55,679 nucleotides of DNA from NCBI RefSeq assembly GCF_006345805.1, contig NW_021834824.1, positions 1-55,679 of the forward strand, read 5' to 3'. Source of the stretch: Octopus sinensis (lineage: Eukaryota). This document shows, piece after piece, positions 8,917-32,004 of this stretch. A model generated the notes under the pieces. The model made no database searches. It was given only the letters and a program-made list of their open reading frames with translations, and had not been told where the DNA came from. Position 1 is the first letter of the stretch. Every line of letters begins with the position of its first letter. The translations under genes and the position numbers were made by a program.

Positions 8917-9920
8917 TTGGGTTGGAAACTAAGTTCCCGCCGTTTTTTTTTAATTTTGGAATTTATTGCGTTTTTAAATTTTAGAATCTTTTTTTTTTTT
9001 TGAGAATTATATTTTTGAATCATTTTGGAATTTTTTTTGTTTTACTAGTTAATTTTTGTTACTTGTTTATTTTCAGATCATTAAAATGGAATGTCAAGTT
9101 AAGAAAAACGAGCATTTTCGACACCCACGTCTTTTTGCTTTTAATCAAGGTTCTAAGGCCGCAAAAGCTGCTCATGACATTTGTGCTGTGTATGGAGAGG
9201 GTGCCATAGCTGAAAGAACCGCTCGTGATTGATATGCCAAGTTAAAAAATGGAAATTTTGACCTCAAAGACGCACCTCGTTTTGGCCGTCCAGATGAGTT
9301 CGATGAAGAGCGATTAAACCAATTTTTGCATGAAAATTCTCGTCAAACGACAAGGGAACTGGCACAGAAAATGGAATGCTCCCACACTGCTATAGAGAAG
9401 CATCTTCACTCGATGGGAAAGGTTCAGAAGTATGGATCATGGGTTCCGCATGCTTTAAGTGACAACAACAAAAATCAACGAGCCACAATATGATTTGCAT
9501 GCTCGTCACCGTTCAACTCATGGACACAAGCAAATATTTCTTTACCGAATCGTTACTGAGGACGAGAAATGGTACCTGTACATCAATATGATGCAGCGTA
9601 AGGAATGGCTTAACCCCGGTAAACATGCGAGACCGCGCGTGAAACAAGATCTTCATCCGTGTAAAACGATGTTGTGCGTATGGTGGGACCGGGAAGGGAT
9701 TATTCATTACGAATTGCTTGAACGGAACCAAACGGTCAACGCGGAACTCTATGTTCAACAGATGGAACGACTCAACACGGCTATTCAAGAGAAAAGACCT
9801 AATCGGCAGCATGGAGGTTCTTCTGCTGCACGACTACGCCCGCCCTCATATCGCCAATATGACCAAGGAAGCCATTCAAATGCATGGCTGGAAATTGCTG
9901 CCACACCCGCCGTACTCTCC
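8917..9920 (+). mobile_element. mariner transposon (mellifera-like), 3'-truncated, transposase pseudogene
   Basis: TA followed by TIR-like TTGGGTTGGAAACTAAG. ATG at 9086 gives MECQVKKNEHFRH...WVPHAL...IVTEDEKW...LLLHDYARPH...HPPYSP with stops and frameshifts. No right TIR. Confidence 0.9.
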
Positions 9921-10244
9921 TGTTTTTCCACTTATTTCGTCTTTTTATTTTCCTAAAATTTTCGTTGCGTCTTGCAACCTTTTCAATAGTCCTGACTCTG
10001 TCCGTTATTTACACTGCGTTCCCTTTTGTTTGTTTGTGCGCATGTGTGTGGGTCAGTGTGTGTGTGTGGAAATAAGTGGAAACTTTACCGGTGAGTGTGT
10101 TAAATAATAAGGTACTAAAAGAGAATGACTCTCCCCAGACACAACTGTATATATGTATATATATATTTATATATTCTTTTATTCTTTTACTTGTCTCCAC
10201 TATTTGATTACAGCCATTATATATATTATAAGAACCAGAGAGAA

Positions 10245-16106: not shown

Positions 16107-16242
16107 GAGAAAGAGAGTGTGAGAACGAGTGTTTGAGAGAGAGAGAGAGAGACAGGCAGAGAAGAGAGGGAATCAAATAAAATGTAACTGAAAAAGACAA
16201 AACATGAGAGGTGTGAATAAGAAATAATGACAGAAATTATGC

Positions 16243-16620
16243 GTGCGTATGTATTTGTGCTTGGAGGCACATGGCCTAGTGGTTAGAGCAGCGGACTCGC
16301 GGTCGAGGGATCGCGGGTTCGAATCTCAGACTGGGCGATGTGTGTGTATGTATTTGTGCGTGGAGGCACATGGCCTAGTGGTTAGAGTAGCGGACTCGCG
16401 GTTGAGGGATCGCGGGTTCGAATCTCAAACCGGTCGATGTGTGTGTATGCATTTGTGCGTGGAGGCATATGGCCTTGTGGTTAGAGCAGCGGAGTCGCGG
16501 TCGAGGGATCGCGGGTTCGAATCTCAGACCGGACGATGTGTGTGTATGTATTTGTGTGTATGTATTTCTTAAAGGCGGTTCCCCAGCATGGCTGTAGTCT
16601 AGTGACTGAAACAAGTAAGA
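16243..16620 (+). mobile_element. three tandem 99-bp tRNA-like SINE heads plus a SINE tail
   Basis: GGAGGC starts at 16263, 16362 and 16461. Each unit has A box TGGCCTAGTGG (TGGCCTTGTGG in the third) and B box GGTTCGAATC. Followed by tail AAAGGCGGTTCCCCAGCATGGC...GACTGAAACAAGTAA. Confidence 0.85.
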
Positions 16621-20086: not shown

Positions 20087-20570
20087 TCGGTATTATTATA
20101 CCTGAGAAGGTATAATAATACCGAAATATGTCCTGAGAAGATATAATAATACCGAAAAGGCGGCGAACTGGCAGAAACGTTAGCACGCCGGGCGAAGTGC
20201 TTAGCGGTATTTCGTCTGCCGTTACGTTGTGAGTTCAAATTCCGCCGAGGTCGACTTTGCCTTTCATCCTTTCGGGGTCGATAAATTAAGTACCAGTTAC
20301 GCACTGGGGTCGATGTAATCGACTTAATACCTATATATGTCCTTGTTTGTCCCCTCTGTGTTTAGCCCCTTGTGGGTAATAAAGAAATAGGTATAATAAT
20401 ACCGAAACATGTCTTGAGAAGGTATAGTAATACCGAAACATGTTCTGAGAAGGTATAATAATACCGAAACATGTTCTGAGAAGGTATAATAATACCGAAA
20501 CATGTCTTGAGAAGATATAATAATACCGAAACATGTCTTGAGAAGGTATAATAATACAGAAACGTGTCCT
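20087..20570 (+). repeat. 31-bp minisatellite interrupted by a SINE
   Basis: Unit (C/T)TGAGAAGGTATAATAATACCGAAACATGT(C/T); ACCGAAAC at 20401, 20432, 20463, 20494 and 20525. Confidence 0.9.
20157..20389 (+). mobile_element. SINE family B, full length, inserted in the minisatellite
   Basis: Intact head and core; TATAATAATACCGAA repeated on both sides. Confidence 0.9.
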
Positions 20571-20992
20571 GGGTTCGCACCGTAGCAATCAAATATCAGG
20601 CTCAGATCTTCACCTTTCGTACTTTAATTCAATACTTAATCAATCCAGCTGTTGGAAGCTGAAATAACTTAAATAAATTAGGAATTTATATTATGTGATA
20701 TTTGATATGCCTGCAATTGTCTATATTGTTCGTATACATGTCACTGGCCCCTATGACTTATTTATCTTTTTTTAATTTATGTAAATTATGTAGGCCAAGA
20801 ATATGTTTTACTCCTTTTGCATATGTCAAAGTTCCTTGGTTACTAGAGATAGGGTAAGGCAATTGTTGTGCTAATGACGCCTATTGAGGCAGAAACGCAT
20901 GTACTAGATTATCCTCTTCTCTCCAAGCAATAAGCCCATTGTTTTCCTTCGTGGCATGTCAGCTTTGGGGAAATTCTTGACTCTTGAGATTA

Positions 20993-21310
20993 TCTCAGCA
21001 TCTCACATGGAGCTAGTCGCAATTGTCAATCGTAATGCATGCTCAAGATTCGGAGTTAATTTTAATAAATCTAGAATTTATATTGGGTGGTATTTGATAT
21101 ACCTAATTCTTTTAGCTCGTTCTTGTTTAACAAACACATGCATATACATACACATGTACATTCACATACACACGCACCCACATATATACACACTCACAAA
21201 CACACACATTTACATATACTCACATACGTACATACACACAGATACATACATACATACATACATACATACATACATACATACAAACGTACGTACGTACGTA
21301 CGTACATACA

Positions 21311-21340
<30 letters not shown>
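20993..21340 (+). repeat. host segment A, donor of an inverted duplication
   Basis: Reverse complement of 23304-23669; identical translations in ORFs 20956.. and 22522... Confidence 0.95.
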
Positions 21341-21344
<4 letters not shown>

Positions 21345-21416
21345 CATACTCACATACATACATACATTCATGCATACATACATATATACATACTCACATA
21401 CATACATACATTCATG

Positions 21417-21896: not shown

Positions 21897-21940
<44 letters not shown>

Positions 21941-21942
<2 letters not shown>

Positions 21943-23303
21943 ATAAAACGGTAAGATAACAAAAGAAAGAAAAAGACCTCAATATTATGTAAATAGAGGA
22001 AATTTATCTATACATATGTTACATTACTCGGTAGTCAAGATAAAACTCTGAGTTTCAGATGCCGAAGTGGAAATCCACAACACCATCTCTTCGGTTATCT
22101 GGCTATTTGAAAACGTTATGAAAAAATACCGTTAAAAATTAAGGGAAATTACTCTGTTATAACTCTGCTTTGCCTGCGTACTTATACATCGCTCGCATTT
22201 TTCGTCATAAAAATTATATAAAAATACATAAAAATATATAAAAATATATAAAAATATATAAAATCTTCTTGGGACATAACACAGAAAGCATGTTCTATCC
22301 GTTTTCTTTAGGGGACCAAAAACGTAACAGAAATTTAGTCACATGTGGGCATGATCCGAAAAACTCTGTCCTTGTATTTAGACATGTGGTAGGGTCTAAG
22401 CTGCTTTTCCAGATAAACCATCTCTCCATGTCGCATAAACCGCACCTTCCGCTGCCGTTAGTATAGGGCTTACATCTGGCCAAAATCTTCCATTGTATGT
22501 TATAATCGACACCTTTATCTCTTAAAGACCAAATATGATTGGATAATTGTGTCGCTTTTTTCTTTTGTTCCAGTGCCTAAAGCTCAAAGTGTGGTTATTG
22601 AACCTGGCCTTGAAATTACCCTCTGTCAGGCCCACGTATTTCTTCGTCGAAACGGTGTCTTTAGTGGTTATAGAGTTTACGGTAGCTTCATATATGATGG
22701 TCTTGGACATGCAAGCTCCATTTAGCGGGCACAATTCTTTATTCCTGCATGAACAGCTGTTTTCTTCTTGTGTTTTTTGTATGTTATGATTGATTATGTT
22801 TTTAAAATTGGTAGTTGAACTAAAACTAATTTTTAAATTGTGTCTATTGAAGAGTTTCCTATAAGCATGGTTAACTGGAAAATGTCTATCTATCAGTGCT
22901 AGGAAATATTTACCTATATTGAAGGCCACCTCGGGTGAGTAAGGGGGCGTAAACCAGATGACCTTCCTATTTCTATTATTCCTTTTCCTTACTGTTGGGC
23001 TGGTGATAGGTGTATATTTTATTTTTTCGCTAAAACCACTATCTTTTAAAGCTTTATTATAAACTGGGGCAACGCTATTGAAGATGTCCTCATTAGATGA
23101 GAGGCTAGAAATCCTCTTACTAATATTTTTAACTAAATTTTTGAATACTATAGGGGGATGGCATGAACCTACATTAATATAACTTAGTCTATCATTGGGC
23201 TTCCTATAAGGCTTATAAATATTATTATTGAGATCTAAGGAAACGTCTAAGAAATTGACAACCGTCAGGTTAGTGTCTATAGTTATACTAAGTCCGAAGT
23301 GTT
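21941..23303 (-). mobile_element. Penelope-like retroelement, 5'-truncated (RT C-terminus, GIY-YIG endonuclease, 3' UTR)
   Basis: NFLDVSLDL...KPYRKPND...HPP...WFTPPYS...CPLNGAC...IIYEATV...KKYVGLTEGNFKARFNNH, then after one frameshift in an A-run (~22556) ATQLSNHIWSL...CGLCDMER. The 3' end abuts (TA)n at 21899-21940. Confidence 0.93.
22038..22100 (-). ncRNA. type I hammerhead ribozyme fold in the PLE 3' UTR (variant core)
   Basis: AGAUAA-CCGAAGA-GAUG..long stem II..CAUC-U-GAAAC-UC-A-GAGU-U-UUAUCU: 6-bp stem I and palindromic stem III; U4C change and an extra U before GAAA. Confidence 0.75.
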
Positions 23304-23669
23304 TGTATGTATGTATGTATGTATGTATGTATGTATGTATGTACGTACGTACGTACGTACGTTTGTATGTATGTATGTATGTATGTATGTATGTATGTAT
23401 GTATGTATGTATGTATGTATCTGTGTGTATGTACGTATGTGAGTATATGTAAATGTGTGTGTTTGTGAGTGTGTATATATGTGGGTGCGTGTGTATGTGA
23501 ATGTACATGTGTATGTATATGCATGTGTTTGTTAAACAAGAACGAGCTAAAAGAATTAGGTATATCAAATACCACCCAATATAAATTCTAGATTTATTAA
23601 AATTAACTCCGAATCTTGAGCATGCATTACGATTGACAATTGCGACTAGCTCCATGTGAGATGCTGAGA
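23304..23669 (-). repeat. inverted copy of host segment A
   Basis: Matches 20993-21340 except for microsatellite length (13 vs 9 CATA). Confidence 0.95.
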
Positions 23670-26600
23670 CAAGGGGATTTTTTTGTAAGTAAAATTACAT
23701 TTAATTCATTAATAGCGAAACAATTGTCCCAAAATAATCTGTATTTTTGTTATTTTTTATTTGCCCTGTCCGTGTGAGCTAACAATCGTACTGACTTTCA
23801 TGGGAAACATGTATTTTTGTGGTTGAAACCTTTTGGATTAACTGGTGCTAGAGTGAGCCATATAGTGACCACTCTCTTATATTTATTTTGTAAAATATTA
23901 TAATATATTATAAAATATTATAATATCCAGGTTTCTCGGAGCACTAGGCCACTTGGTGTAGAATAGATATACTATTAAATTAGTATCTAATTCTCTCACC
24001 CTTATTAATTAATTATAATTATGCTGCATTTATTTCTAAATGCTGTATTTGTTTTCCGTGAAAATTTGGCGCGCTGTTAGTTGGGGCATTTGAATTATAA
24101 CGTCGGATGTAATCAATTGAACCACACGCGTATTTATCGTTATGGTAAAATCTGGCGTGTGATTGAGTGGATTTCATCCAGATAGTTTTGGCTTAGGAGC
24201 TACAAGTGGATTTTTTTGTAAGTAAAATTACATTTAATTCATTAATAGCGAAACAATTGTCCCAAAATAATCTGTATTTTTGTTATTTTTTATTTGCCCT
24301 GTCCGTGTGAGCTAACAATCGTACTGACTTTCATGGGAACATGTATTTTTGTGGTTGAAACCTTTTGGATTAACTGGTGCTAGAGTGAGCCATATAGTGA
24401 CCACTCTCTTATATTTATTTTGTAAAAATATTATAATATATTATAAAATATTATAATATCCAGGTTTCTCGGAGCACTAGGCCACTTGGTGTAGAATAGA
24501 TATACTATTAAGTTAGTATCTAATTCTCTCACCCTTATTAATTAATTATAATTATGCTGCATTTATTTCTAAATGCTGTATTTGTTTTCCGTGAAAATTT
24601 GGCGCGCTGTTAGTTGGGGCATTTGAATTATAACGTCGGATGTAATCAATTGAACCACACGCGTATTTATCGTTATGGTAAAATCTGGCGTGTGATTGAG
24701 TGGATTTCATCCAGATAGTTTTGGCTGAGGAGCTACAAGTGGATTTTTTTGTAAGTAAAATTACATTTAATTCATTATATAGCGAAACAATTGTCCCAAA
24801 TAATCTGTATTTTTGTTATTTTTTATTTGCCTGTCCGTGTGAGCTAACAATCGTACTGACTTTCATGGGAACATGTATTTTTGTGGTTGAAACCTTTTGG
24901 ATTAACTGGTGCTAGAGTGAGCCATATAGTGACCACTCTCTTATATTTATTTTGTAAAAATATTATAATATATTATAAAATATTATATAATCCAGGTTTC
25001 TCGGAGCACTAGGCCACTTGGTGTAGAATAGATATACTATTAAATTAGTATCTAATTCTCTCACCCTTATTAATTAATATATAATTATGCTGCATTTATT
25101 TCTAAATGCTGTATTTGTTTTCCGTGAAAATTTGGCGCGCTGTTAGTTGGGGCATTTGAATTATAACGTCGGATGTAATCAATTGAACCACACGCGTATT
25201 TATCGTTATGGTAAAATCTGGCGTGTGATTGAGTGGATTTCATCCAGATAGTTTTGGCTGAGGAGCTACAAGTGGATTTTTTTGTAAGTAAAATTACATT
25301 TAATTCATTAATAGCGAAACAATTGTCCCAAAATAATCTGTATTTTTGTTATTTTTTATTTGCCCTGTCCGTGTGAGCTAACAATCGTACTGACTTTCAT
25401 GGGAAACATGTATTTTTGTGGTTGAAACCTTTTGGATTAACTGGTGCTAGAGTGAGCCATATAGTGACCACTCTCTTATATTTATTTTGTAAAAATATTA
25501 TAATATATTATAAAATATTATAATAATCCAGGTTTCTCGGAGCACTAGGCCACTTGGTGTAGAATAGATATACTATTAAATTAGTATCTAATTCTCTCAC
25601 CCTTATTAATTAATTATAATTATGCTGCATTTATTTCTAAATGCTGTATTTGTTTTCCGTGAAAATTTGGCGCGCTGTTAGTTGGGGCATTTGAATTATA
25701 ACGTCGGATGTAATCAATTGAACCACACGCGTATTTATCGTTATGGTAAAATCTGGCGTGTGATTGAGTGGATTTCATCCAGATAGTTTTGGCTGAGGAG
25801 CTACAAGTGGATTTTTTTGTAAGTAAAATTACATTTAATTCATTAATAGCGAAACAATTGTCCCAAAATAATCTGTATTTTTGTTATTTTTTATTTGCCC
25901 TGTCCGTGTGAGCTAACAATCGTACTGACTTTCATGGGAAACATGTATTTTTGTGGTTGAAACCTTTTGGATTAACTGGTGCTAGAGTGAGCCATATAGT
26001 GACCACTCTCTTATATTTATTTTGTAAAAATATTATATATATTATAAAATATTATAATAATCCAGGTTTCTCGAGCACTAGGCCACTTGGTGTAGAATAG
26101 ATATACTATTAAGTTAGTATCTAATTCTCTCACCCTTATTAATTAATTATAATTATGCTGCATTTATTTCTAAATGCTGTATTTGTTTTCCGTGAAAATT
26201 TGGCGCGCTGTTAGTTGGGGCATTTGAATTATAACGTCGGATGTAATCAATTGAACCACACGCGTATTTATCGTTATGGTAAAATCTGGCGTGTGATTGA
26301 GTGGATTTCATCCAGATAGTTTTGGCTGAGGAGCTACAAGTGGATTTTTTTGTAAGTAAAATTACATTTAATTCATTAATAGCGAAACAATTGTCCCAAA
26401 ATAATCTGTATTTTTGTTATTTTTTATTTGCCCTGTCCGTGTGAGCTAACAATCGTACTGACTTTCATGGGAAACATGTATTTTTGTGGTTGAAACCTTT
26501 TGGATTAACTGGTGCTAGAGTGAGCCATATAGTGACCACTCTCTTATATTTATTTTGTAAAAATATTATAATATATTATAAAATATTATAATAATCTCCA

Positions 26601-29600
26601 GGTTTCTCGGAGCACTAGGCCACTTGGTGTAGAATAGATATACTATTAAATTAGTATCTAATTCTCTCACCCTTATTAATTAATTATAATTATGCTGCAT
26701 TTATTTCTAAATGCTGTATTTGTTTTCCGTGAAAATTTGGCGCGCTGTTAGTTGGGGCATTTGAATTATAACGTCGGATGTAATCAATTGAACCACACGC
26801 GTATTTATCGTTATGGTAAAATCTGGCGTGTGATTGAGTGGATTTCATCCAGATAGTTTTGGCTGAGGAGCTACAAGTGGATTTTTTTGTAAGTAAAATT
26901 ACATTTAATTCATTAATAGCGAAACAATTGGCCCAAATAATCTGTATTTTTGTTATTTTTTATTTGCCCTGTCCGTGTGAGCTAACATCGTACTGACTTT
27001 CATGGGAAACATGTATTTTTGTGGTTGAAACCTTTTGGATTAACTGGTGCTAGAGTGAGCCATATAGTGACCACTCTCTTATATTTATTTTGTAAAAATA
27101 TTATAATATATTATAAAATATTATAATAATCCAGGTTTCTCGGAGCACTAGGCCACTTGGTGTAGAATAGATATACTATTAAGTTAGTATCTAATTCTCT
27201 CACCCTTATTAATTAATTATAATTATGCTGCATTTATTTCTAAATGCTGTATTTGTTTTCCGTGAAAATTTGGCGCGCTGTTAGTTGGGGCATTTGAATT
27301 ATAACGTCGGATGTAATCAATTGAACCACACGCGTATTTATCGTTATGGTAAAATCTGGCGTGTGATTGAGTGGATTTCATCCAGATAGTTTTGGCTGAG
27401 GAGCTACAAGTGGATTTTTTTGTAAGTAAAATTACATTTAATTCATTAATAGCGAAACAATTGTCCCAAAATAATCTGTATTTTTGTTATTTTTTATTTG
27501 CCCTGTCCGTGTGAGCTAACAATCGTACTGACTTTCATGGGAACATGTATTTTTGTGGTTGAAACCTTTTGGATTAACTGGTGCTAGAGTGAGCCATATA
27601 GTGACCACTCTCTTATATTTATTTTGTAAAAATATTATAATATATTATAAAATATTATAATAATCCAGGTTTCTCGGAGCACTAGGCCACTTGGTGTAGA
27701 ATAGATATACTATTAAATTAGTATCTAATTCTCTCACCCTTATTAATTAATTATAATTATGCTGCATTTTTTCTAAATGCTGTATTTGTTTTCCGTGAAA
27801 ATTTGGCGCGCTGTTAGTTGGGGCATTTGAATTATAACGTCGGATGTAATCAATTGAACCACACGCGTATTTATCGTTATGGTAAAATCTGGCGTGTGAT
27901 TGAGTGGATTTCATCCAGATAGTTTTGGCTGAGGAGCTACAAGTGGATTTTTTTGTAAGTAAAATTACATTTAATTCATTATTAATAGCGAAACAATTGT
28001 CCCAAAATAATCTGTATTTTTGTTATTATTTTATTTGCCCTGTCCGTGTGAGCTAACAATCGTACTGACTTTCATGGGAAACATGTATTTTTGTTGGTTG
28101 AAACCTTTTGGATTAACTGTGCTAGAGTGAGCCATATAGTGACCACTCTCTTATATTTATTTTGTAAAAATATTATAATATATTATAAAATATTATAATA
28201 ATCCAGGTTTCTCGGAGCACTAGGCCACTTGGTGTAGAATAGATATACTATTAAATTAGTATCTAATTCTCTCACACCCTTATTAATTAATTATAATTAT
28301 GCTGCATTTATTTCTAAATGCTGTATTTGTTTTCCGTGAAAATTTGGCGCGCTGTTAGTTGGGGCATTTGAATTATAACGTCGGATGTAATCAATTGAAC
28401 CACACGCGTATTTATCGTTATGGTAAAATCTGGCGTGTGATTGAGTGGATTTCATCCAGATAGTTTTGGCTGAGGAGCTACAAGTGGATTTTTTTGTAAG
28501 TAAAATTACATTTAATTCATTATAGCGAAACAATTGTCCCAAATAATCTGTATTTTTGTTATTTTTTTATTTGCCCTGTCCGTGTGAGCTAACAATCGTA
28601 CTGACTTTCATGGGAAACATGTATTTTTGTGGTTGAAACCTTTTGGATTAACTGGTGCTAGAGTGAGCCATATAGTGACCACTCTCTTATATTTATTTTG
28701 TAAAAATATTATAATATATTATAAAATATTATAATAATCCAGGTTTCTCGGAGCACTAGGCCACTTGGTGTAGAATAGATATACTATTACTTAGTTTGTA
28801 TCTAATTCTCTCACCCTTATTAATTAATTATAATTATGCTGCATTTATTCTAAATGCTGTATTTGTTTTCCGTGAAAATTTGGCGCGCTGTTAGTTGGGG
28901 CATTTGAATTATAACGTCGATGTAATCAATTGAACCACACGCGTATTTATCGTTATGGTAAAATCTGGCGTGTGATTGAGTGGATTTCATCCAGATAGTT
29001 TTGGCTGAGGAGCTACAAGTGGATTTTTTTGTAAGTAAAATTACATTTAATTCATTAATAGCGAAACAATTGTCCCAAAATAATCTGTATTTTTGTTATT
29101 TTTTATTTGCCCTGTCCGTGTGAGCTAACAATCGTACTGACTTTCATGGGAAATTTTTGTGGTTGAAACCTTTTGGATTAACTGGTGCTAGAGTGAGCCA
29201 TATAGTGACCACTCTCTTATATTTATTTTGTAAAAATATTATAATATATTATAAAATATTATAATAATCCATCCAGGTTTCTCGGAGCACTAGGCCACTT
29301 GGTGTAGAATAGATATACTTTAAATTAGTATCTAATTCTCTCACCCTTATTAATTAATTATAATTATGCTGCATTTATTTCTAAATGCTGTATTTTGTTT
29401 TCCGTGAAAATTTGGCGCGCTGTTAGTTGGGCATTTGAATTATAACGTCGGATGTAATCAATTGAACCACACGCGTATTTATCGTTATGGTAAAATCTGG
29501 CGTGTGATTGAGTGGATTTCATCCAGATAGTTTTGCTGAGGAGCTACAAGGGATTTTTTTGTAAGTAAAATTACATTTAATTCATTAATAGCGAAACAAT

Positions 29601-30970
29601 TGTCCCAAATAATCTGTATTTTTGTTATTTTTTATTTGCCCTGTCCGTGTGAGCTAACAATCGTACTGACTTTCATGGAAACATGTATTTTTGTGGTTGA
29701 AACCTTTTGGATTAACTGGTGCTAGAGTGAGCCATATAGTGACCACTCTCTATATTTTATTTTGTAAAAATATTATAATATATTATAAAATATTATAATA
29801 ATCCAGGTTTCTCGGAGCACTAGGCCACTTGGTGTAGAATAGATATACTATTAAGTTAGTATCTAATTCTCTCACCCTTATTAATTAATTAATTTATGCT
29901 GCATTTATTTCTAAATGCTGTATTTGTTTTTTCCGTGAAAATTTGGCGCGCTGTTAGTTGGGGCATTTGAATTATAACGTCGGATGTAATCAATTGAACC
30001 ACACGCGTATTTATCGTTATGGTAAAATCTGGCGTGTGATTGAGTGGATTTCATCCAGATAGTTTTGGCTGAGGAGCTACAAGTGGATTTTTTTGTAAGT
30101 AAAATTACATTTAATTCATTAATAGCGAAACAATTGTCCCAAAATAATCTGTATTTTTGTTATTTTTTTTATTTGCCCTGTCCGTGTGAGCTAACAATCG
30201 TACTGACTTTCATGGGAAACATGTATTTTTGTGGTTGAAACCTTTTGGATTAACTGGTGCTAGAGTGAGCCATATAGTGACCACTCTCTTATATTTATTT
30301 TGTAAAAATATTATAATATATTATAAAATATTATAATAATCCAGTTTCTCGGAGCACTAGGCCACTGGTGTAGAATAGATATACTATTAAATTAGTATCT
30401 AATTCTCTCACCCTTATTAATTAATTATAATTATGCTGCTGCATTTATTTCTAAATGCTGTATTTGTTTTCCGTGAAAATTTGGCGCGCTGTTAGTTGGG
30501 GCATTTGAATTATAACGTCGGATGTAATCAATTGAACCACACGCGTATTTATCGTTATGGTAAAATCTGGCGTGTGATTGAGTGGATTTCATCCAGATAG
30601 TTTTGGCTGAGGAGCTACAAGTGGATTTTTTTGTAAGTAAAATTACATTTAATTCATTAATAGCGAAACAATTGTCCCAAAATAATCTGTATTTTTTGTT
30701 ATTTTTTATTTGCCCTGTCCCTGTCCTGTGAGCTAACAATCGTACTGACTTTCATGGGAAACATGTATTTTTGTGGTTGAAACCTTTTGGATTAACTGGT
30801 GCTAGAGTGAGCCATATAGTGACCACTCTCTTATATTTATTTTGTAAAAATATTATAATATATTATAAAATATTATAATAATCCAGTTTCTCGGAGCACT
30901 AGGCCACTTGGTGTAGAATAGATATACTATAATTAGTATCTAATTCTCTCACCCTTATTAATTAATTATA
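23670..30970 (+). mobile_element. tandem array of ~534-bp hammerhead-containing units (~13.6 copies), retrozyme-like
   Basis: Core C3 at 24192, 24725, 25258, 25793, 26326, 26863, 27396, 27929, 28470, 29005, 29536, 30069 and 30607 (spacing 531-541), plus a 5'-truncated first unit. Ends in (TA)n at ~30967-30990. Confidence 0.9.
25245..25340 (+). ncRNA. type I hammerhead ribozyme (representative intact unit of the array)
   Basis: CAGAU-A-GUUUUGG | CUGAGGA | GCUA..UAGC | GAAA | palindrome ACAAUUGU | C (25327) | CCAAAAU-A-AUCUG. All core nucleotides present, GUC site, 12-bp stem I with one mismatch. Confidence 0.9.
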
Positions 30971-31402
30971 TATATATATATATATATATATTCATAAATA
31001 ATACATACATATTCAAAACTAACTGACGGTGGCCCTAGGACACAATGTGTAATTAGGCATATTATATACTAAATTTCTTTTTAATCTTTATAAGCTTTTC
31101 AAAATTTAACTTATTCAGAATTTGCTCATTATAAAATGAAAATTTGAGCTATTTTGCATTACATTACAAACGCGGGCGCAGTGGGATGTTATAGTAGAGC
31201 GAATTCTACAACATGGAGGTTTCTAGTATACTCTCCTTCTTCTGTGAGCATCAAACTTGAAGTCATGTGAGGATAAGATGACCAAGACAGCAACAAGTTC
31301 ATTAATATTTCATTCGGCTAGAAAAATTTTGACAATTGCGAGACTTATGCCGAAGGATTGCTTTAGTGATATCGATTCACGTGAAAACAAACAGTATATA
31401 TA

Positions 31403-32004
31403 TATTTCTTTATTACCCACAAGGGGCTAAACATAGAGGGGACAAACAAGGACAAACAAACGGATTAAGTCGATTACATCGACCCCAGTGCGAGACTGGT
31501 ACTTTATTTATCGAGCCCGAAAGGATGAAAGGCAAAGTCGACCTCGGCGGAATTTGAACTCAGAATGTAACGACTGACGAAATACCTATTTCTTTACTAC
31601 CCACAAGGGGCTAAACACAGAGAGGACAAACAAGGACAGACAAACGGATTAAGTCGATTATATCGACCCCAGTGCATAACTGGTACTTATTTAATCGACT
31701 CCGAAAGGATGAAAGGCAAAGTCGACCTCGGTGGAATTTGAACTCACAACGTAACGGCAGACGAAATACATATTTCCTTACTACCCACAAGGGGCTAAAC
31801 ACAGAGAGGACAAACAAGGACAGTCAAACGGATTAAGTCGATTATATCGACCCCAGTGCGTAACTGGTACTTATTTAATCGACTCCGAAAGGATGAAAGG
31901 CAAAGTCGACCTCGGCGGAATTTGAACTCAGAACGTAGCGGCAGACGAAATACAGCTAAGCATTTCGCCCGGCGTGCTAACATCTCTGCCAGCTCGCCAC
32001 CTTA
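31403..32004 (-). mobile_element. SINE family B with two extra tandem 184-bp 3' units
   Basis: Tail motif recurs at 31408, 31592 and 31776; only the rightmost unit has the head. Confidence 0.9.

What the first reader, a model, noticed from the sequence alone, without database searches (positions are those of the whole stretch)
23670..30970. 7.3-kb tandem array in which every 534-bp unit carries a hammerhead ribozyme (retrozyme-like)
Seen: 13 complete motifs plus one truncated. Ten retain CUGAGGA, GAAA, GUC and stem I; unit 24192 has CUUAGGA, unit 26863 has GGC, and unit 29536 has a damaged stem I. Stem I extends to 12 bp, and stem II (GCUA/UAGC) continues as AGUGGAU/AUUCAUU and UGUAA/UUACA. 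Stem III is the loopless palindrome ACAAUUGU. Known: minimal type I hammerheads with palindromic stem III cleave as dimers and mark PLE termini and animal non-LTR retrozymes (newt satellite 2, schistosome Sm-alpha, cricket pDo500), which yield monomeric circular RNAs. Inference: a plus-strand transcript would self-process into ~534-nt monomers or circles. I know of no description in cephalopods but cannot search.
Basis: partly seen in the sequence, partly recalled or inferred. Interest (0 to 1): 0.92.

Follow-up and report, generated by a model that had tools for sequence, protein, structure and literature searches.

The report
Hammerhead-ribozyme tandem repeat (retrozyme-type array)
A 7.3-kb stretch of 13 nearly identical 535-bp repeats, each encoding a self-cutting "hammerhead" RNA motif of the kind carried by Penelope-like jumping genes; it looks like a new example of a known class (animal retrozymes), not a new kind of element.

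Summary
Window 23670-30971 (+) is a head-to-tail array of 13 full units (530-538 bp, consensus 535, ~99% identical) plus partial units at both ends.

Rfam finds no hammerhead, even at E<=10. It also misses a clear hammerhead in a Penelope-like element (PLE) used as a control. A covariance model built only from 23 hammerheads of PLE relatives from other organisms finds exactly these 13 motifs (27 bits, E~3e-5; damaged ones 17-20 bits) and nothing else in the window.

The unit is non-coding, has 32% GC, and folds as a circle far better than shuffles (z -5.7). Helix III forms only between two copies. A decayed PLE with its own decayed hammerhead lies next to the array.

Best reading: a non-LTR retrozyme-type array with a PLE-type hammerhead. 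Cleavage, circles and mobility are inferred, not shown. Because the units are near-identical, the 13 motifs count as one observation. No copies from elsewhere could be retrieved, and the cephalopod origin could not be verified. Hammerheads were already counted in the giant squid genome. Novelty: new member of a known kind.

The parts
23670..30971 (+). Tandem array: 59-nt leading partial unit + 13 full units (530-538 bp, consensus 535) + ~292-nt trailing partial unit; ~13.7 units
23670..23728 (+). Truncated first motif: distal helix II, GAAA, ACAAUUGU, C^; no CUGANGA core and no 5' strand of helix I
24184..24269 (+). Hammerhead 1, core-damaged: CUUAGGA (G5->U); 18.8 bits
24717..24803 (+). Hammerhead 2: core intact; helix I 3' strand CCAAAU (A4->A3, register slip after 5 bp); +1 nt in helix II; 26.6 bits
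25250..25335 (+). Hammerhead 3, consensus; predicted cleavage after C25327; 27.0 bits
25785..25870 (+). Hammerhead 4, consensus; cleavage after 25862; 27.0 bits
26318..26403 (+). Hammerhead 5, consensus; cleavage after 26395; 27.0 bits
26855..26940 (+). Hammerhead 6, damaged: GGC (U16.1->G) plus the A-run deletion in helix I; 17.0 bits
27388..27473 (+). Hammerhead 7, consensus; cleavage after 27465; 27.0 bits
27921..28009 (+). Hammerhead 8: core and helix I consensus; 3-nt insertion in distal helix II; 26.6 bits
28462..28546 (+). Hammerhead 9: core intact; helix I 3' strand A4->A3; 1-nt deletion in helix II; 26.8 bits
28997..29082 (+). Hammerhead 10, consensus; cleavage after 29074; 27.0 bits
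29528..29612 (+). Hammerhead 11, damaged: G deleted from the 5' strand of helix I, T deleted in helix II, A-run deletion in the 3' strand; 20.4 bits
30061..30146 (+). Hammerhead 12, consensus; cleavage after 30138; 27.0 bits
30599..30684 (+). Hammerhead 13, consensus; cleavage after 30676; 27.0 bits
30967..30991 (.). (TA)12 microsatellite at the 3' junction; the unit's own TTAATTATA (unit position ~283-291) merges into it
22295..23295 (-). Neighbour, not part of the array: 5'-truncated, once-frameshifted remnant of an RT/GIY-YIG (Penelope-like) ORF with RT thumb, Cys linker, GIY-YIG and a C-terminal Cys/His motif
22036..22102 (-). The remnant's own decayed hammerhead: AGAUAA|CcGAAGA|GAUG..CAUC|uGAA|ACUCAGAGU|U^UUAUCU (U4->C, extra U before G12); the element then ends at (TA)n 21899-21940
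23300..23669 (.). Right arm of an inverted repeat (left arm 20990-21362) that brackets the PLE remnant; its outer end is the first base of the array

Best explanation
The array is a non-LTR retrozyme-type repeat: a non-coding, AT-rich 535-bp unit in head-to-tail copies, each carrying one plus-strand type I hammerhead of the Penelope-like-element (PLE) kind.

Shown by sequence: the full catalytic core. Helix I has 11 of 12 positions paired and is closed by the other ~440 nt of the unit. Helix II is unusually long at 51 nt in three segments. Helix III is an 8-nt palindrome.

Inferred mechanism: a read-through transcript spanning two or more units folds so that the helix III segments of two hammerheads pair with each other (the double-hammerhead form). 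[quoted passage not shown] A host tRNA-type ligase could close these into circles. A PLE reverse transcriptase/endonuclease acting in trans could copy such RNA back into DNA as multimers, with a preference for (TA)n targets. The present array seems also to have grown at the DNA level in blocks of about five units.
For: Core and helices are read directly from the sequence.

Descriptor: 0 hits in 40 Mb of random sequence and 0 in the rest of the window.

Independent covariance model R1 was built from 23 hammerheads of PLE relatives from other organisms. The training alignment shows 90% of cells paired and 11 of 13 pairs with compensatory changes. R1 hits exactly the 13 motifs, at 27 bits for intact ones and 17-20 bits for the three damaged ones; the next best hit in the window is E 0.65. 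Hammerheads of PLE relatives that were not used for training score 17.6-42 bits.

The helix III form ACA..UGU and the enlarged helix II are the family signature (PMC4209133).

The unconstrained MFE fold reproduces helices I and II (z -3.6). The circular unit folds at -145.3 vs -107.4 +/- 6.7 kcal/mol for shuffles (z -5.7, 68% paired), and the plus strand is more stable than the minus.

Helix III as a monomer hairpin is +2.4 kcal/mol; as a duplex it is -6.4 to -7.8.

The unit has no ORF above 87 aa, 32% GC, and no other ribozyme family at E<=10.

A PLE remnant with its own hammerhead lies ~370 bp from the array. The remnant, the array and the control element in L001 all end 3' at (TA)n.

The class is documented in animals, including a mollusc (PMC7229834). 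Its unit lengths span 51-972 bp and it derives from PLE pseudo-LTRs (bioRxiv 10.64898/2026.07.22.740005).
Against: There is no expression, cleavage or circle data.

The 13 copies are ~99% identical, so they supply no covariation. No copy from another locus or species could be retrieved.

Rfam hammerhead models do not hit, even at E<=10.

The R1 E-value extrapolates to about one chance hit per multi-Gb genome.

There is no clear target-site duplication. The left edge coincides with the end of an inverted duplication, and the sequence that follows the other arm is not found beyond the array, so this is not a simple insertion.

A five-unit periodicity of shared variants points to DNA-level amplification.

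The unit has no similarity to the adjacent PLE remnant.

In the Anolis Poseidon PLE, hammerhead cleavage was not needed for insertion and was not seen in RNA-seq.

Each unit has T5-T7 runs, so Pol III could not make multimers.
Confidence: 0.8

Rival explanations
1. The unit is the pseudo-LTR of an autonomous PLE that lives elsewhere in the genome, and this locus is an ORF-less tandem of that terminal repeat. This overlaps with the main reading, since retrozymes are now proposed to be exactly such derivatives.
For: The hammerhead is of PLE type and is recognised by a PLE-hammerhead model. In relatives, hammerheads flank the ORF ~2.4 kb apart as pseudo-LTRs. A PLE remnant is adjacent. Xenopus retrozymes group with PLE pseudo-LTRs.
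Against: There is no RT/GIY-YIG ORF inside or downstream of the array; no ORF of 110 aa or more lies between 23655 and 35191. The unit has no similarity to the adjacent remnant or its 3' region. The remnant's own hammerhead has a different sequence.
Confidence: 0.3
2. It is an ordinary satellite maintained and amplified only by DNA-level processes such as unequal exchange or replication slippage. The hammerhead is an inherited relic with no present role.
For: Shared variants have a five-unit period: A253G in units 2, 5, 7, 10 and 12, and +TC in units 6 and 11. Lag-5 differences are the lowest, permutation P 0.007-0.017, though the lag was chosen post hoc. The array edge coincides with a duplication breakpoint and there is no clean TSD. 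Three of 13 motifs are dead and two are slipped. PLE hammerhead cleavage is dispensable in vitro.
Against: Eight motifs keep every core position and both long helices. The global plus-strand fold is far more stable than chance and preserves helices I and II. The class is expressed as circular RNA in every animal tested so far.
Confidence: 0.25
3. It is a chance hammerhead-like motif that became multiplied because it sits in a repeat unit.
For: The 13 copies are one observation. The R1 E-value of 3e-5 per 111 kb searched extrapolates to about one hit per multi-Gb genome. Rfam is negative.
Against: The match goes beyond what either model scores: helix I extends to 12 positions, G10.1-C11.1 is present, helix III is palindromic, and helix II is a structured 51-nt domain. 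It also occurs in exactly the genomic context (tandem unit, low GC, next to a PLE) where such ribozymes are known.
Confidence: 0.05
4. The copy number or arrangement is an assembly artefact: a collapsed, expanded or chimeric long-read assembly.
For: 50 of 62 variant columns are indels, mostly 1 nt in homopolymers, typical of long-read consensus error. A 100%-identical 128-bp inverted duplicate abuts the array.
Against: Units carry distinct non-homopolymer variants: A253G, a 6-nt deletion, 3-4-nt insertions, and G5->U. The microsatellite parts of the two inverted arms differ. Such an artefact would change the unit count, not the existence of the unit or its ribozyme.
Confidence: 0.1

Closest known systems
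Metazoan non-LTR retrozymes (Cervera & de la Pena 2020, PMC7229834: coral, mussel, axolotl; classical examples newt satellite 2, Schistosoma Sm-alpha, cricket pDo500)
   Same: Head-to-tail tandem units, each with one plus-strand type I hammerhead. Low GC (32%). Non-coding, with no LTR, PBS or PPT. The monomer is predicted to be highly self-paired. Helix I has ~6 bp before an irregularity and helix II ~4 bp before an internal loop. Helix III is short and palindromic. PLEs co-occur.
   Different: The 535-bp unit is above the 150-450 bp given for invertebrates, although inside the 51-972 bp range of the 2026 survey. Helix II is not capped after 4 bp but continues into a 51-nt three-segment arm. 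Rfam Hammerhead_1 does not detect the motif. Expression and circular RNA are unknown. No retrozyme has been described in a cephalopod in the searchable literature, and the taxon is unverified.
PLE-associated minimal/dimeric hammerheads (Cervera & de la Pena 2014, PMC4209133; Lunse, Weinberg & Breaker 2017)
   Same: Helix III is a loopless palindrome (ACAAUUGU here; ACAAAUUUGU, ACAUUAAUGU and ACAGACCUGU in relatives) that is stable only between two copies. Helix II is larger than usual. G10.1-C11.1 is present. A model built from these hammerheads scores the motif at 27 bits.
   Different: It is not located in the pseudo-LTR of an ORF-bearing element. Helix I is much longer (12 positions vs 4-8). 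The cleavage triplet is GUC, whereas most relatives collected here have GUA. Helix II is about twice the longest seen in the relatives (25 nt).
Amphibian satellite hammerheads (HHR_Amex1/2, axolotl)
   Same: Tandem repeat with a weak helix III. For HHR_Amex2, helix III is 2 bp plus a palindromic tetraloop, as here when read as a monomer. Efficient cleavage occurs only in dimeric constructs.
   Different: The taxon and the unit length (330-350 bp) differ. The amphibian motifs keep conserved loop 1-loop 2 tertiary contacts, which are not recognisable here.

Membership tests
Hammerhead ribozyme, type I | Conserved core: C3 U4 G5 A6 N7 G8 A9; G12 A13 A14; A15.1-U16.1; H17 not G | tested here: met
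   CUGAGGA / GAA / A..U / C in the consensus and in 10 of 13 motifs. The three exceptions are G5->U, U16.1->G and a helix I deletion.
Hammerhead ribozyme, type I | Three helices around the core, with helix I the open one and a G10.1-C11.1 pair | tested here: met
   Helix I has 11 of 12 positions paired. Helix II is GCUA/UAGC plus two further segments. Helix III is closed or palindromic. The unconstrained MFE fold reproduces helices I and II.
Hammerhead ribozyme, type I | Match to the curated Rfam hammerhead models | tested here: not met
   No hammerhead hit at the gathering score or at E<=10. Control: Rfam also missed a clear PLE hammerhead in L001 at E<=0.1, so this test has low sensitivity for PLE-type variants.
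Hammerhead ribozyme, type I | Match to an independent covariance model of related hammerheads | tested here: met
   R1 was built from 23 PLE-relative hammerheads with no window sequence. It gives 13 hits, all in the array, at 27 bits (E~3e-5); non-training family members score 17.6-42 bits.
Hammerhead ribozyme, type I | Site-specific self-cleavage | not testable with these tools
   Needs in vitro transcription of monomer and dimer constructs.
Hammerhead ribozyme, type I | Covariation in helices across independent homologues | tested here: inconclusive
   Units are ~99% identical, and no homologue was found elsewhere.
Metazoan non-LTR retrozyme | Head-to-tail tandem repeats with one type I hammerhead per unit | tested here: met
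   ~13.7 units, one motif each, plus strand only.
Metazoan non-LTR retrozyme | Unit of a few hundred bp; low GC (<45-50%) | tested here: met
   535 bp is above the 150-450 bp range of PMC7229834 and inside the 51-972 bp range of the 2026 preprint. GC is 0.32.
Metazoan non-LTR retrozyme | Non-coding; no LTR, PBS or PPT | tested here: met
   The longest stop-to-stop frame is 87 aa, antisense. There are no internal long direct repeats.
Metazoan non-LTR retrozyme | Monomer RNA predicted to be stable and highly self-paired | tested here: met
   Circular MFE -145.3 kcal/mol, z -5.7 against dinucleotide shuffles, 68% paired.
Metazoan non-LTR retrozyme | Expressed as linear and circular monomer RNA | not testable with these tools
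   No transcriptome access.
Metazoan non-LTR retrozyme | Dispersed at many loci; target-site duplications when present | tested here: inconclusive
The 13-nt repeat TTGACAATTGCGA is not at the array edges and also occurs in the inverted duplicate.
Metazoan non-LTR retrozyme | Co-occurrence with hammerhead-bearing PLEs in the same genome | tested here: met
   An RT/GIY-YIG remnant with its own decayed hammerhead lies ~370 bp from the array.
Autonomous Penelope-like element (the array as its pseudo-LTRs) | RT + GIY-YIG ORF between the hammerhead-bearing repeats | tested here: not met
   There is no ORF in the units or downstream of the array. The adjacent remnant is on the other strand, points away, and shares no sequence with the unit.

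The most novel reading that the evidence does not exclude
This is a live cephalopod retrozyme family whose hammerhead carries an unusually large, structured helix II arm (51 nt). The arm makes it invisible to standard Rfam annotation, so such elements may be systematically undercounted. It would be transcribed and processed by dimer-only cleavage into abundant ~535-nt circular RNAs and mobilised by a still-active PLE. The five-unit periodicity would then reflect reverse transcription of a multimeric circle, not unequal exchange.
Probability: 0.15. Interest if true: 0.6.

Novelty: new member of a known kind. Interest (0 to 1): 0.4.

Why it matters
If it is active, it extends ribozyme-processed circular RNAs (retrozymes) to another animal lineage. 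It also gives a compact locus holding a retrozyme array, a PLE remnant and two different PLE-type hammerheads within 10 kb, which bears on the recent proposal that animal retrozymes are non-autonomous PLE derivatives. Practically, it shows that curated Rfam models miss both this motif and ordinary PLE hammerheads. Genome annotations that rely on Rfam, such as the 235 hits reported for giant squid, are therefore likely to undercount them.

Tried and rejected
(1) Rfam at the gathering score and at E<=10 gave no hammerhead. I rejected this as evidence of absence after the L001 control.

(2) Looking for copies elsewhere found nothing: exact products of two unit ORFs, the specific hammerhead pattern in metagenome and viral contigs, and an 87-aa antisense frame as protein bait.

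(3) Similarity between the unit and the rest of the window, including the PLE remnant's 3' region, gave only AT-rich low-complexity matches.

(4) TSD hypothesis for TTGACAATTGCGA (23633-23645 and 31329-31341): weakened. The repeat is not at the array edges, and a third copy lies in the inverted duplicate.

(5) My first reading that the array starts at 23663 inside the catalytic core was withdrawn. GCTGAGA is flank, as the inverted duplicate shows.

(6) Short-spaced hammerhead pairs in L026 and L005 as possible retrozyme-like intermediates: they are not tandem repeats.

(7) Taxon check through the Rost-like exon gave only an unnamed UniParc entry at 99% identity.

(8) Pfam on the RT/GIY-YIG remnant gave only a sub-threshold GIY-YIG hit. 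The architecture was established instead by aligning longer homologues.

(9) A literature search found no described cephalopod satellite of ~535 bp. ARAGORN found no tRNA genes.
Full report
OBSERVATION. Direct-repeat analysis shows copies spaced 532-542 bp apart from 23669 to about 31000. TRF missed the array only because its longest period is 500. Cutting at the predicted ribozyme cleavage site gives 13 full units of 530-538 bp (consensus 535 bp), a 59-nt leading partial unit and a ~292-nt trailing partial unit. Units differ from the consensus by 0-8 substitutions and a few short indels. Of 62 variant columns, 50 are indels, mostly 1 nt in homopolymers, and 54 are private to one unit. The 13 motifs therefore count as one independent observation.

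THE MOTIF. In the consensus the sequence reads AGAUAGUUUUGG|CUGAGGA|GCUA-[43 nt]-UAGC|GAA|ACAAUUGU|C^CCAAAAUAAUCU. Every conserved hammerhead position is present: C3 U4 G5 A6 N7 G8 A9, the G10.1-C11.1 pair, G12 A13 A14, A15.1-U16.1 and C17. The topology is type I, with helix I open. Helix I has 12 positions: 10 Watson-Crick pairs, one G-U and one A-A mismatch. An unconstrained MFE fold of the 102-nt region reproduces helix I and a three-segment helix II (GCUA/UAGC, AGUGGAUU/AAUUCAUU, UGUAA/UUACA), z -3.6.

Per-unit audit: eight motifs are fully consensus.

IS IT MORE THAN CHANCE? Rfam gives no hammerhead at the gathering score, nor at E<=10 on the array. I ran two independent tests.

(i) A formal descriptor (core, helices I-III) hits the consensus only. 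It gives 0 hits in the remaining 48 kb on either strand, even when relaxed. It gives 0 hits in 2 x 20 Mb of first-order Markov sequence at helix I >= 5 and helix II >= 3, and 1-2 per 20 Mb at 4 and 3.

(ii) An independent family model, built from relatives of a neighbouring gene. The ORF that abuts the array on the minus strand turned out to be the C-terminal part of an RT/GIY-YIG protein with 124 homologues. Longer homologues extend into RT motifs (FYPSIT, FDVTMGSxDGAE, GLYRDDGL), followed by a Cys linker, GIY-YIG and a Cys/His tail. That is the Penelope-like element (PLE) architecture.

I fetched 82 loci of relatives from other organisms. My relaxed descriptor found 29 hammerheads in 25 of them (230 kb; chance about 0.02), almost all on the ORF strand. 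Twenty-three distinct ones were aligned. In that alignment 90% of cells are paired and 11 of 13 pairs show changes on both sides, though part of the pairing was imposed by the descriptor used to select them.

The covariance model R1 built from that alignment contains no window sequence. Run over the whole window with filters off, R1 returns exactly the 13 array motifs. Ten score 26.6-27.0 bits (E about 3e-5) and the three damaged ones score 20.4, 18.8 and 17.0 bits. The next best hit anywhere is 12.4 bits, E 0.65. In the relatives' loci, about 45 hammerheads that were not used for training score 17.6-42 bits. So 27 bits, after the penalty for a 47-nt insertion in helix II, is a typical family score.

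As a control for the Rfam negative: Rfam at E<=0.1 also missed the clear PLE hammerhead in L001 (GUAGC|CUGACGA|GUG-GAAA-CAC|GAA|ACUUUAAGU|A^GCUAC, 30 nt after the ORF stop).

A caution: E 3e-5 per 111 kb extrapolates to roughly one chance hit per multi-Gb genome, and the calibration is rough. Part of the weight therefore rests on context and on features the model does not score, such as the long helix I, the structured helix II and the global fold.

WHAT KIND OF HAMMERHEAD. The relatives share a helix III palindrome ACA-NNNN-UGU (ACAAAUUUGU, ACAUUAAUGU, ACAGACCUGU) and often an enlarged helix II. This matches the published description of PLE hammerheads (PMC4209133). The array motif has ACAAUUGU. 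As a monomer hairpin (2 bp plus an AAUU loop) this costs +2.4 kcal/mol and is not predicted to form. As a duplex between two copies it gives -6.4 to -7.8 kcal/mol, like the relatives. A dimeric active form is therefore the likelier one. However, 2 bp plus a tetraloop is also the helix III form of invertebrate motifs reported to cleave as monomers, so dimer dependence is an inference.

THE UNIT AS AN RNA. The unit is non-coding; the longest stop-to-stop frame is 87 aa, antisense. GC is 0.32. No other ribozyme family matches, and there is no hammerhead on the minus strand. As a circle, the plus strand folds at -145.3 kcal/mol against -107.4 +/- 6.7 for dinucleotide shuffles (z -5.7, 68% paired), with helices I and II retained. 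The minus strand gives z -4.7. Each unit contains T5-T7 runs (consensus), so Pol III could not produce multimeric transcripts. Read-through by Pol II or Pol I would be needed; this is inference.

SURROUNDINGS. The PLE remnant runs from about 23295 down to 22295 on the minus strand. It is 5'-truncated and has one frameshift near 22540. About 195 nt past its stop lies its own decayed hammerhead (22102-22036): helix I AGAUAA/UUAUCU, helix III ACUCAGAGU, but U4->C and an extra U before G12. The element then ends at (TA)n 21899-21940. The element in L001 also ends at (TA)n. The array ends where its own TTAATTATA merges into (TA)12 at 30967-30991. (TA)n is a reported preferred PLE target (PMC8557442).

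The unit shares no sequence with the remnant or with anything else in the window. No ORF of 110 aa or more lies between 23655 and 35191. So the array is not the pseudo-LTR of a PLE at this locus.

An unexpected feature is a 373-nt inverted repeat (20990-21362 and 23300-23672, 96% complementary) that brackets the remnant. Its 128-bp unique part is 100% identical between the arms. The outer end of its right arm is the first base of the array. The other arm shows the uninterrupted continuation, and that continuation is not found beyond the array. The left junction is therefore a rearrangement breakpoint, not a clean insertion site, and I found no convincing TSD.

ARRAY GROWTH. The two shared non-homopolymer variants follow a five-unit period. 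A253G is in units 2, 5, 7, 10 and 12 (only 6 of 1287 possible 5-subsets fit period 5), and a +TC insertion is in units 6 and 11. Mean pairwise difference is lowest at lag 5, with permutation P 0.007 for all events and 0.017 for substitutions; the lag was chosen post hoc. This is modest evidence that the array grew in blocks of about 2.67 kb, which points to DNA-level amplification on top of whatever created it.

COMPARISON WITH WHAT IS KNOWN. Animal non-LTR retrozymes are tandem repeats with type I hammerheads. [quoted passage not shown] A 2026 preprint gives consensus lengths of 51-972 bp and argues that they derive from PLE pseudo-LTRs. This array meets every feature I could test; see the membership table. 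Its particular traits are the long helix II arm, the long helix I, the 535-bp unit and its invisibility to Rfam.

On prior art for cephalopods, the giant squid genome paper lists 235 Rfam Hammerhead_1 hits (PMC6962438). I found no paper describing retrozymes or hammerhead satellites in cephalopods. I could not verify that the window is from a cephalopod: a Rost-like exon matches an unnamed UniParc entry at 99%.

A caveat on function: in the Anolis Poseidon PLE, hammerhead cleavage was not required for insertion in vitro, and no RNA-seq ends were seen at the site (PMC11167929).

VERDICT. This is most likely a retrozyme-type array with a PLE-type hammerhead, a new member of a known kind. Self-cleavage, circular RNA and mobility remain inferences. 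Interest is moderate (0.4).

Noticed in passing
window 22295-23295 (-), continuing after a frameshift near 22540: A 5'-truncated, frameshifted remnant of an RT/GIY-YIG (Penelope-like) ORF, 40-52% identical to 124 database proteins. Longer homologues carry the RT motifs FYPSIT, FDVTMGSxDGAE and GLYRDDGL.
   Followed up: yes
window 22036-22102 (-): A decayed PLE hammerhead belonging to that remnant (U4->C, extra U before G12; helix I 6 bp; helix III palindrome ACUCAGAGU). The element then ends at (TA)n 21899-21940.
   Followed up: yes
window 20990-21362 and 23300-23672: A 373-nt inverted repeat (96% complementary; the 128-bp unique part is 100% identical; the inner part is (ACAT)n/(TGTA)n) brackets the PLE remnant. 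Its right outer end is exactly the first base of the array. The origin is unexplained: a complex PLE-type insertion, a rearrangement or an assembly problem.
   Followed up: partly
window 23633-23645, 31329-31341 and 21017-21029 (rc): The 13-nt exact repeat TTGACAATTGCGA occurs on both sides of the array and again in the inverted duplicate. It is not at the array edges, so it is probably not a TSD.
   Followed up: partly
window 23729-30676 (units 1-13): Shared variants show a five-unit (~2.67 kb) periodicity: A253G in units 2, 5, 7, 10 and 12, and +TC at unit position 199 in units 6 and 11. Lag-5 pairwise differences are the lowest (P ~0.01, lag chosen post hoc).
   Followed up: yes
L001 7222-7267 (+) and 4296-4341 (-); 76 hits across L001-L082: Nearly every PLE-relative locus carries hammerheads on the ORF strand, often as a pair ~2.4 kb apart (pseudo-LTRs). 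Rfam at E<=0.1 found none in L001 or L002, so Rfam-based annotation probably undercounts PLE-type hammerheads.
   Followed up: yes
window 9459-9956 (+): An ORF with a mariner-type transposase domain (Pfam Transposase_1, E 2e-26).
   Followed up: no
window 54426-~54930 (-): An exon encoding the C-terminal part of a 'rolling stone' (Rost) family membrane protein (Pfam E 7e-12). It is 99% identical to the unnamed UniParc entry UPI0006959A62.
   Followed up: partly
window 16239-16556 and 31398-31954: Two further tandem repeats. One is 99 bp x 3.2 with a tRNA-like segment (ARAGORN calls no tRNA). The other is 184 bp x 3 (SINE-like), starting ~430 bp downstream of the array.
   Followed up: no
window 20389-20568: A 31-bp x 5.8 tandem repeat (93% matches) just left of the inverted repeat's left arm.
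   Followed up: no
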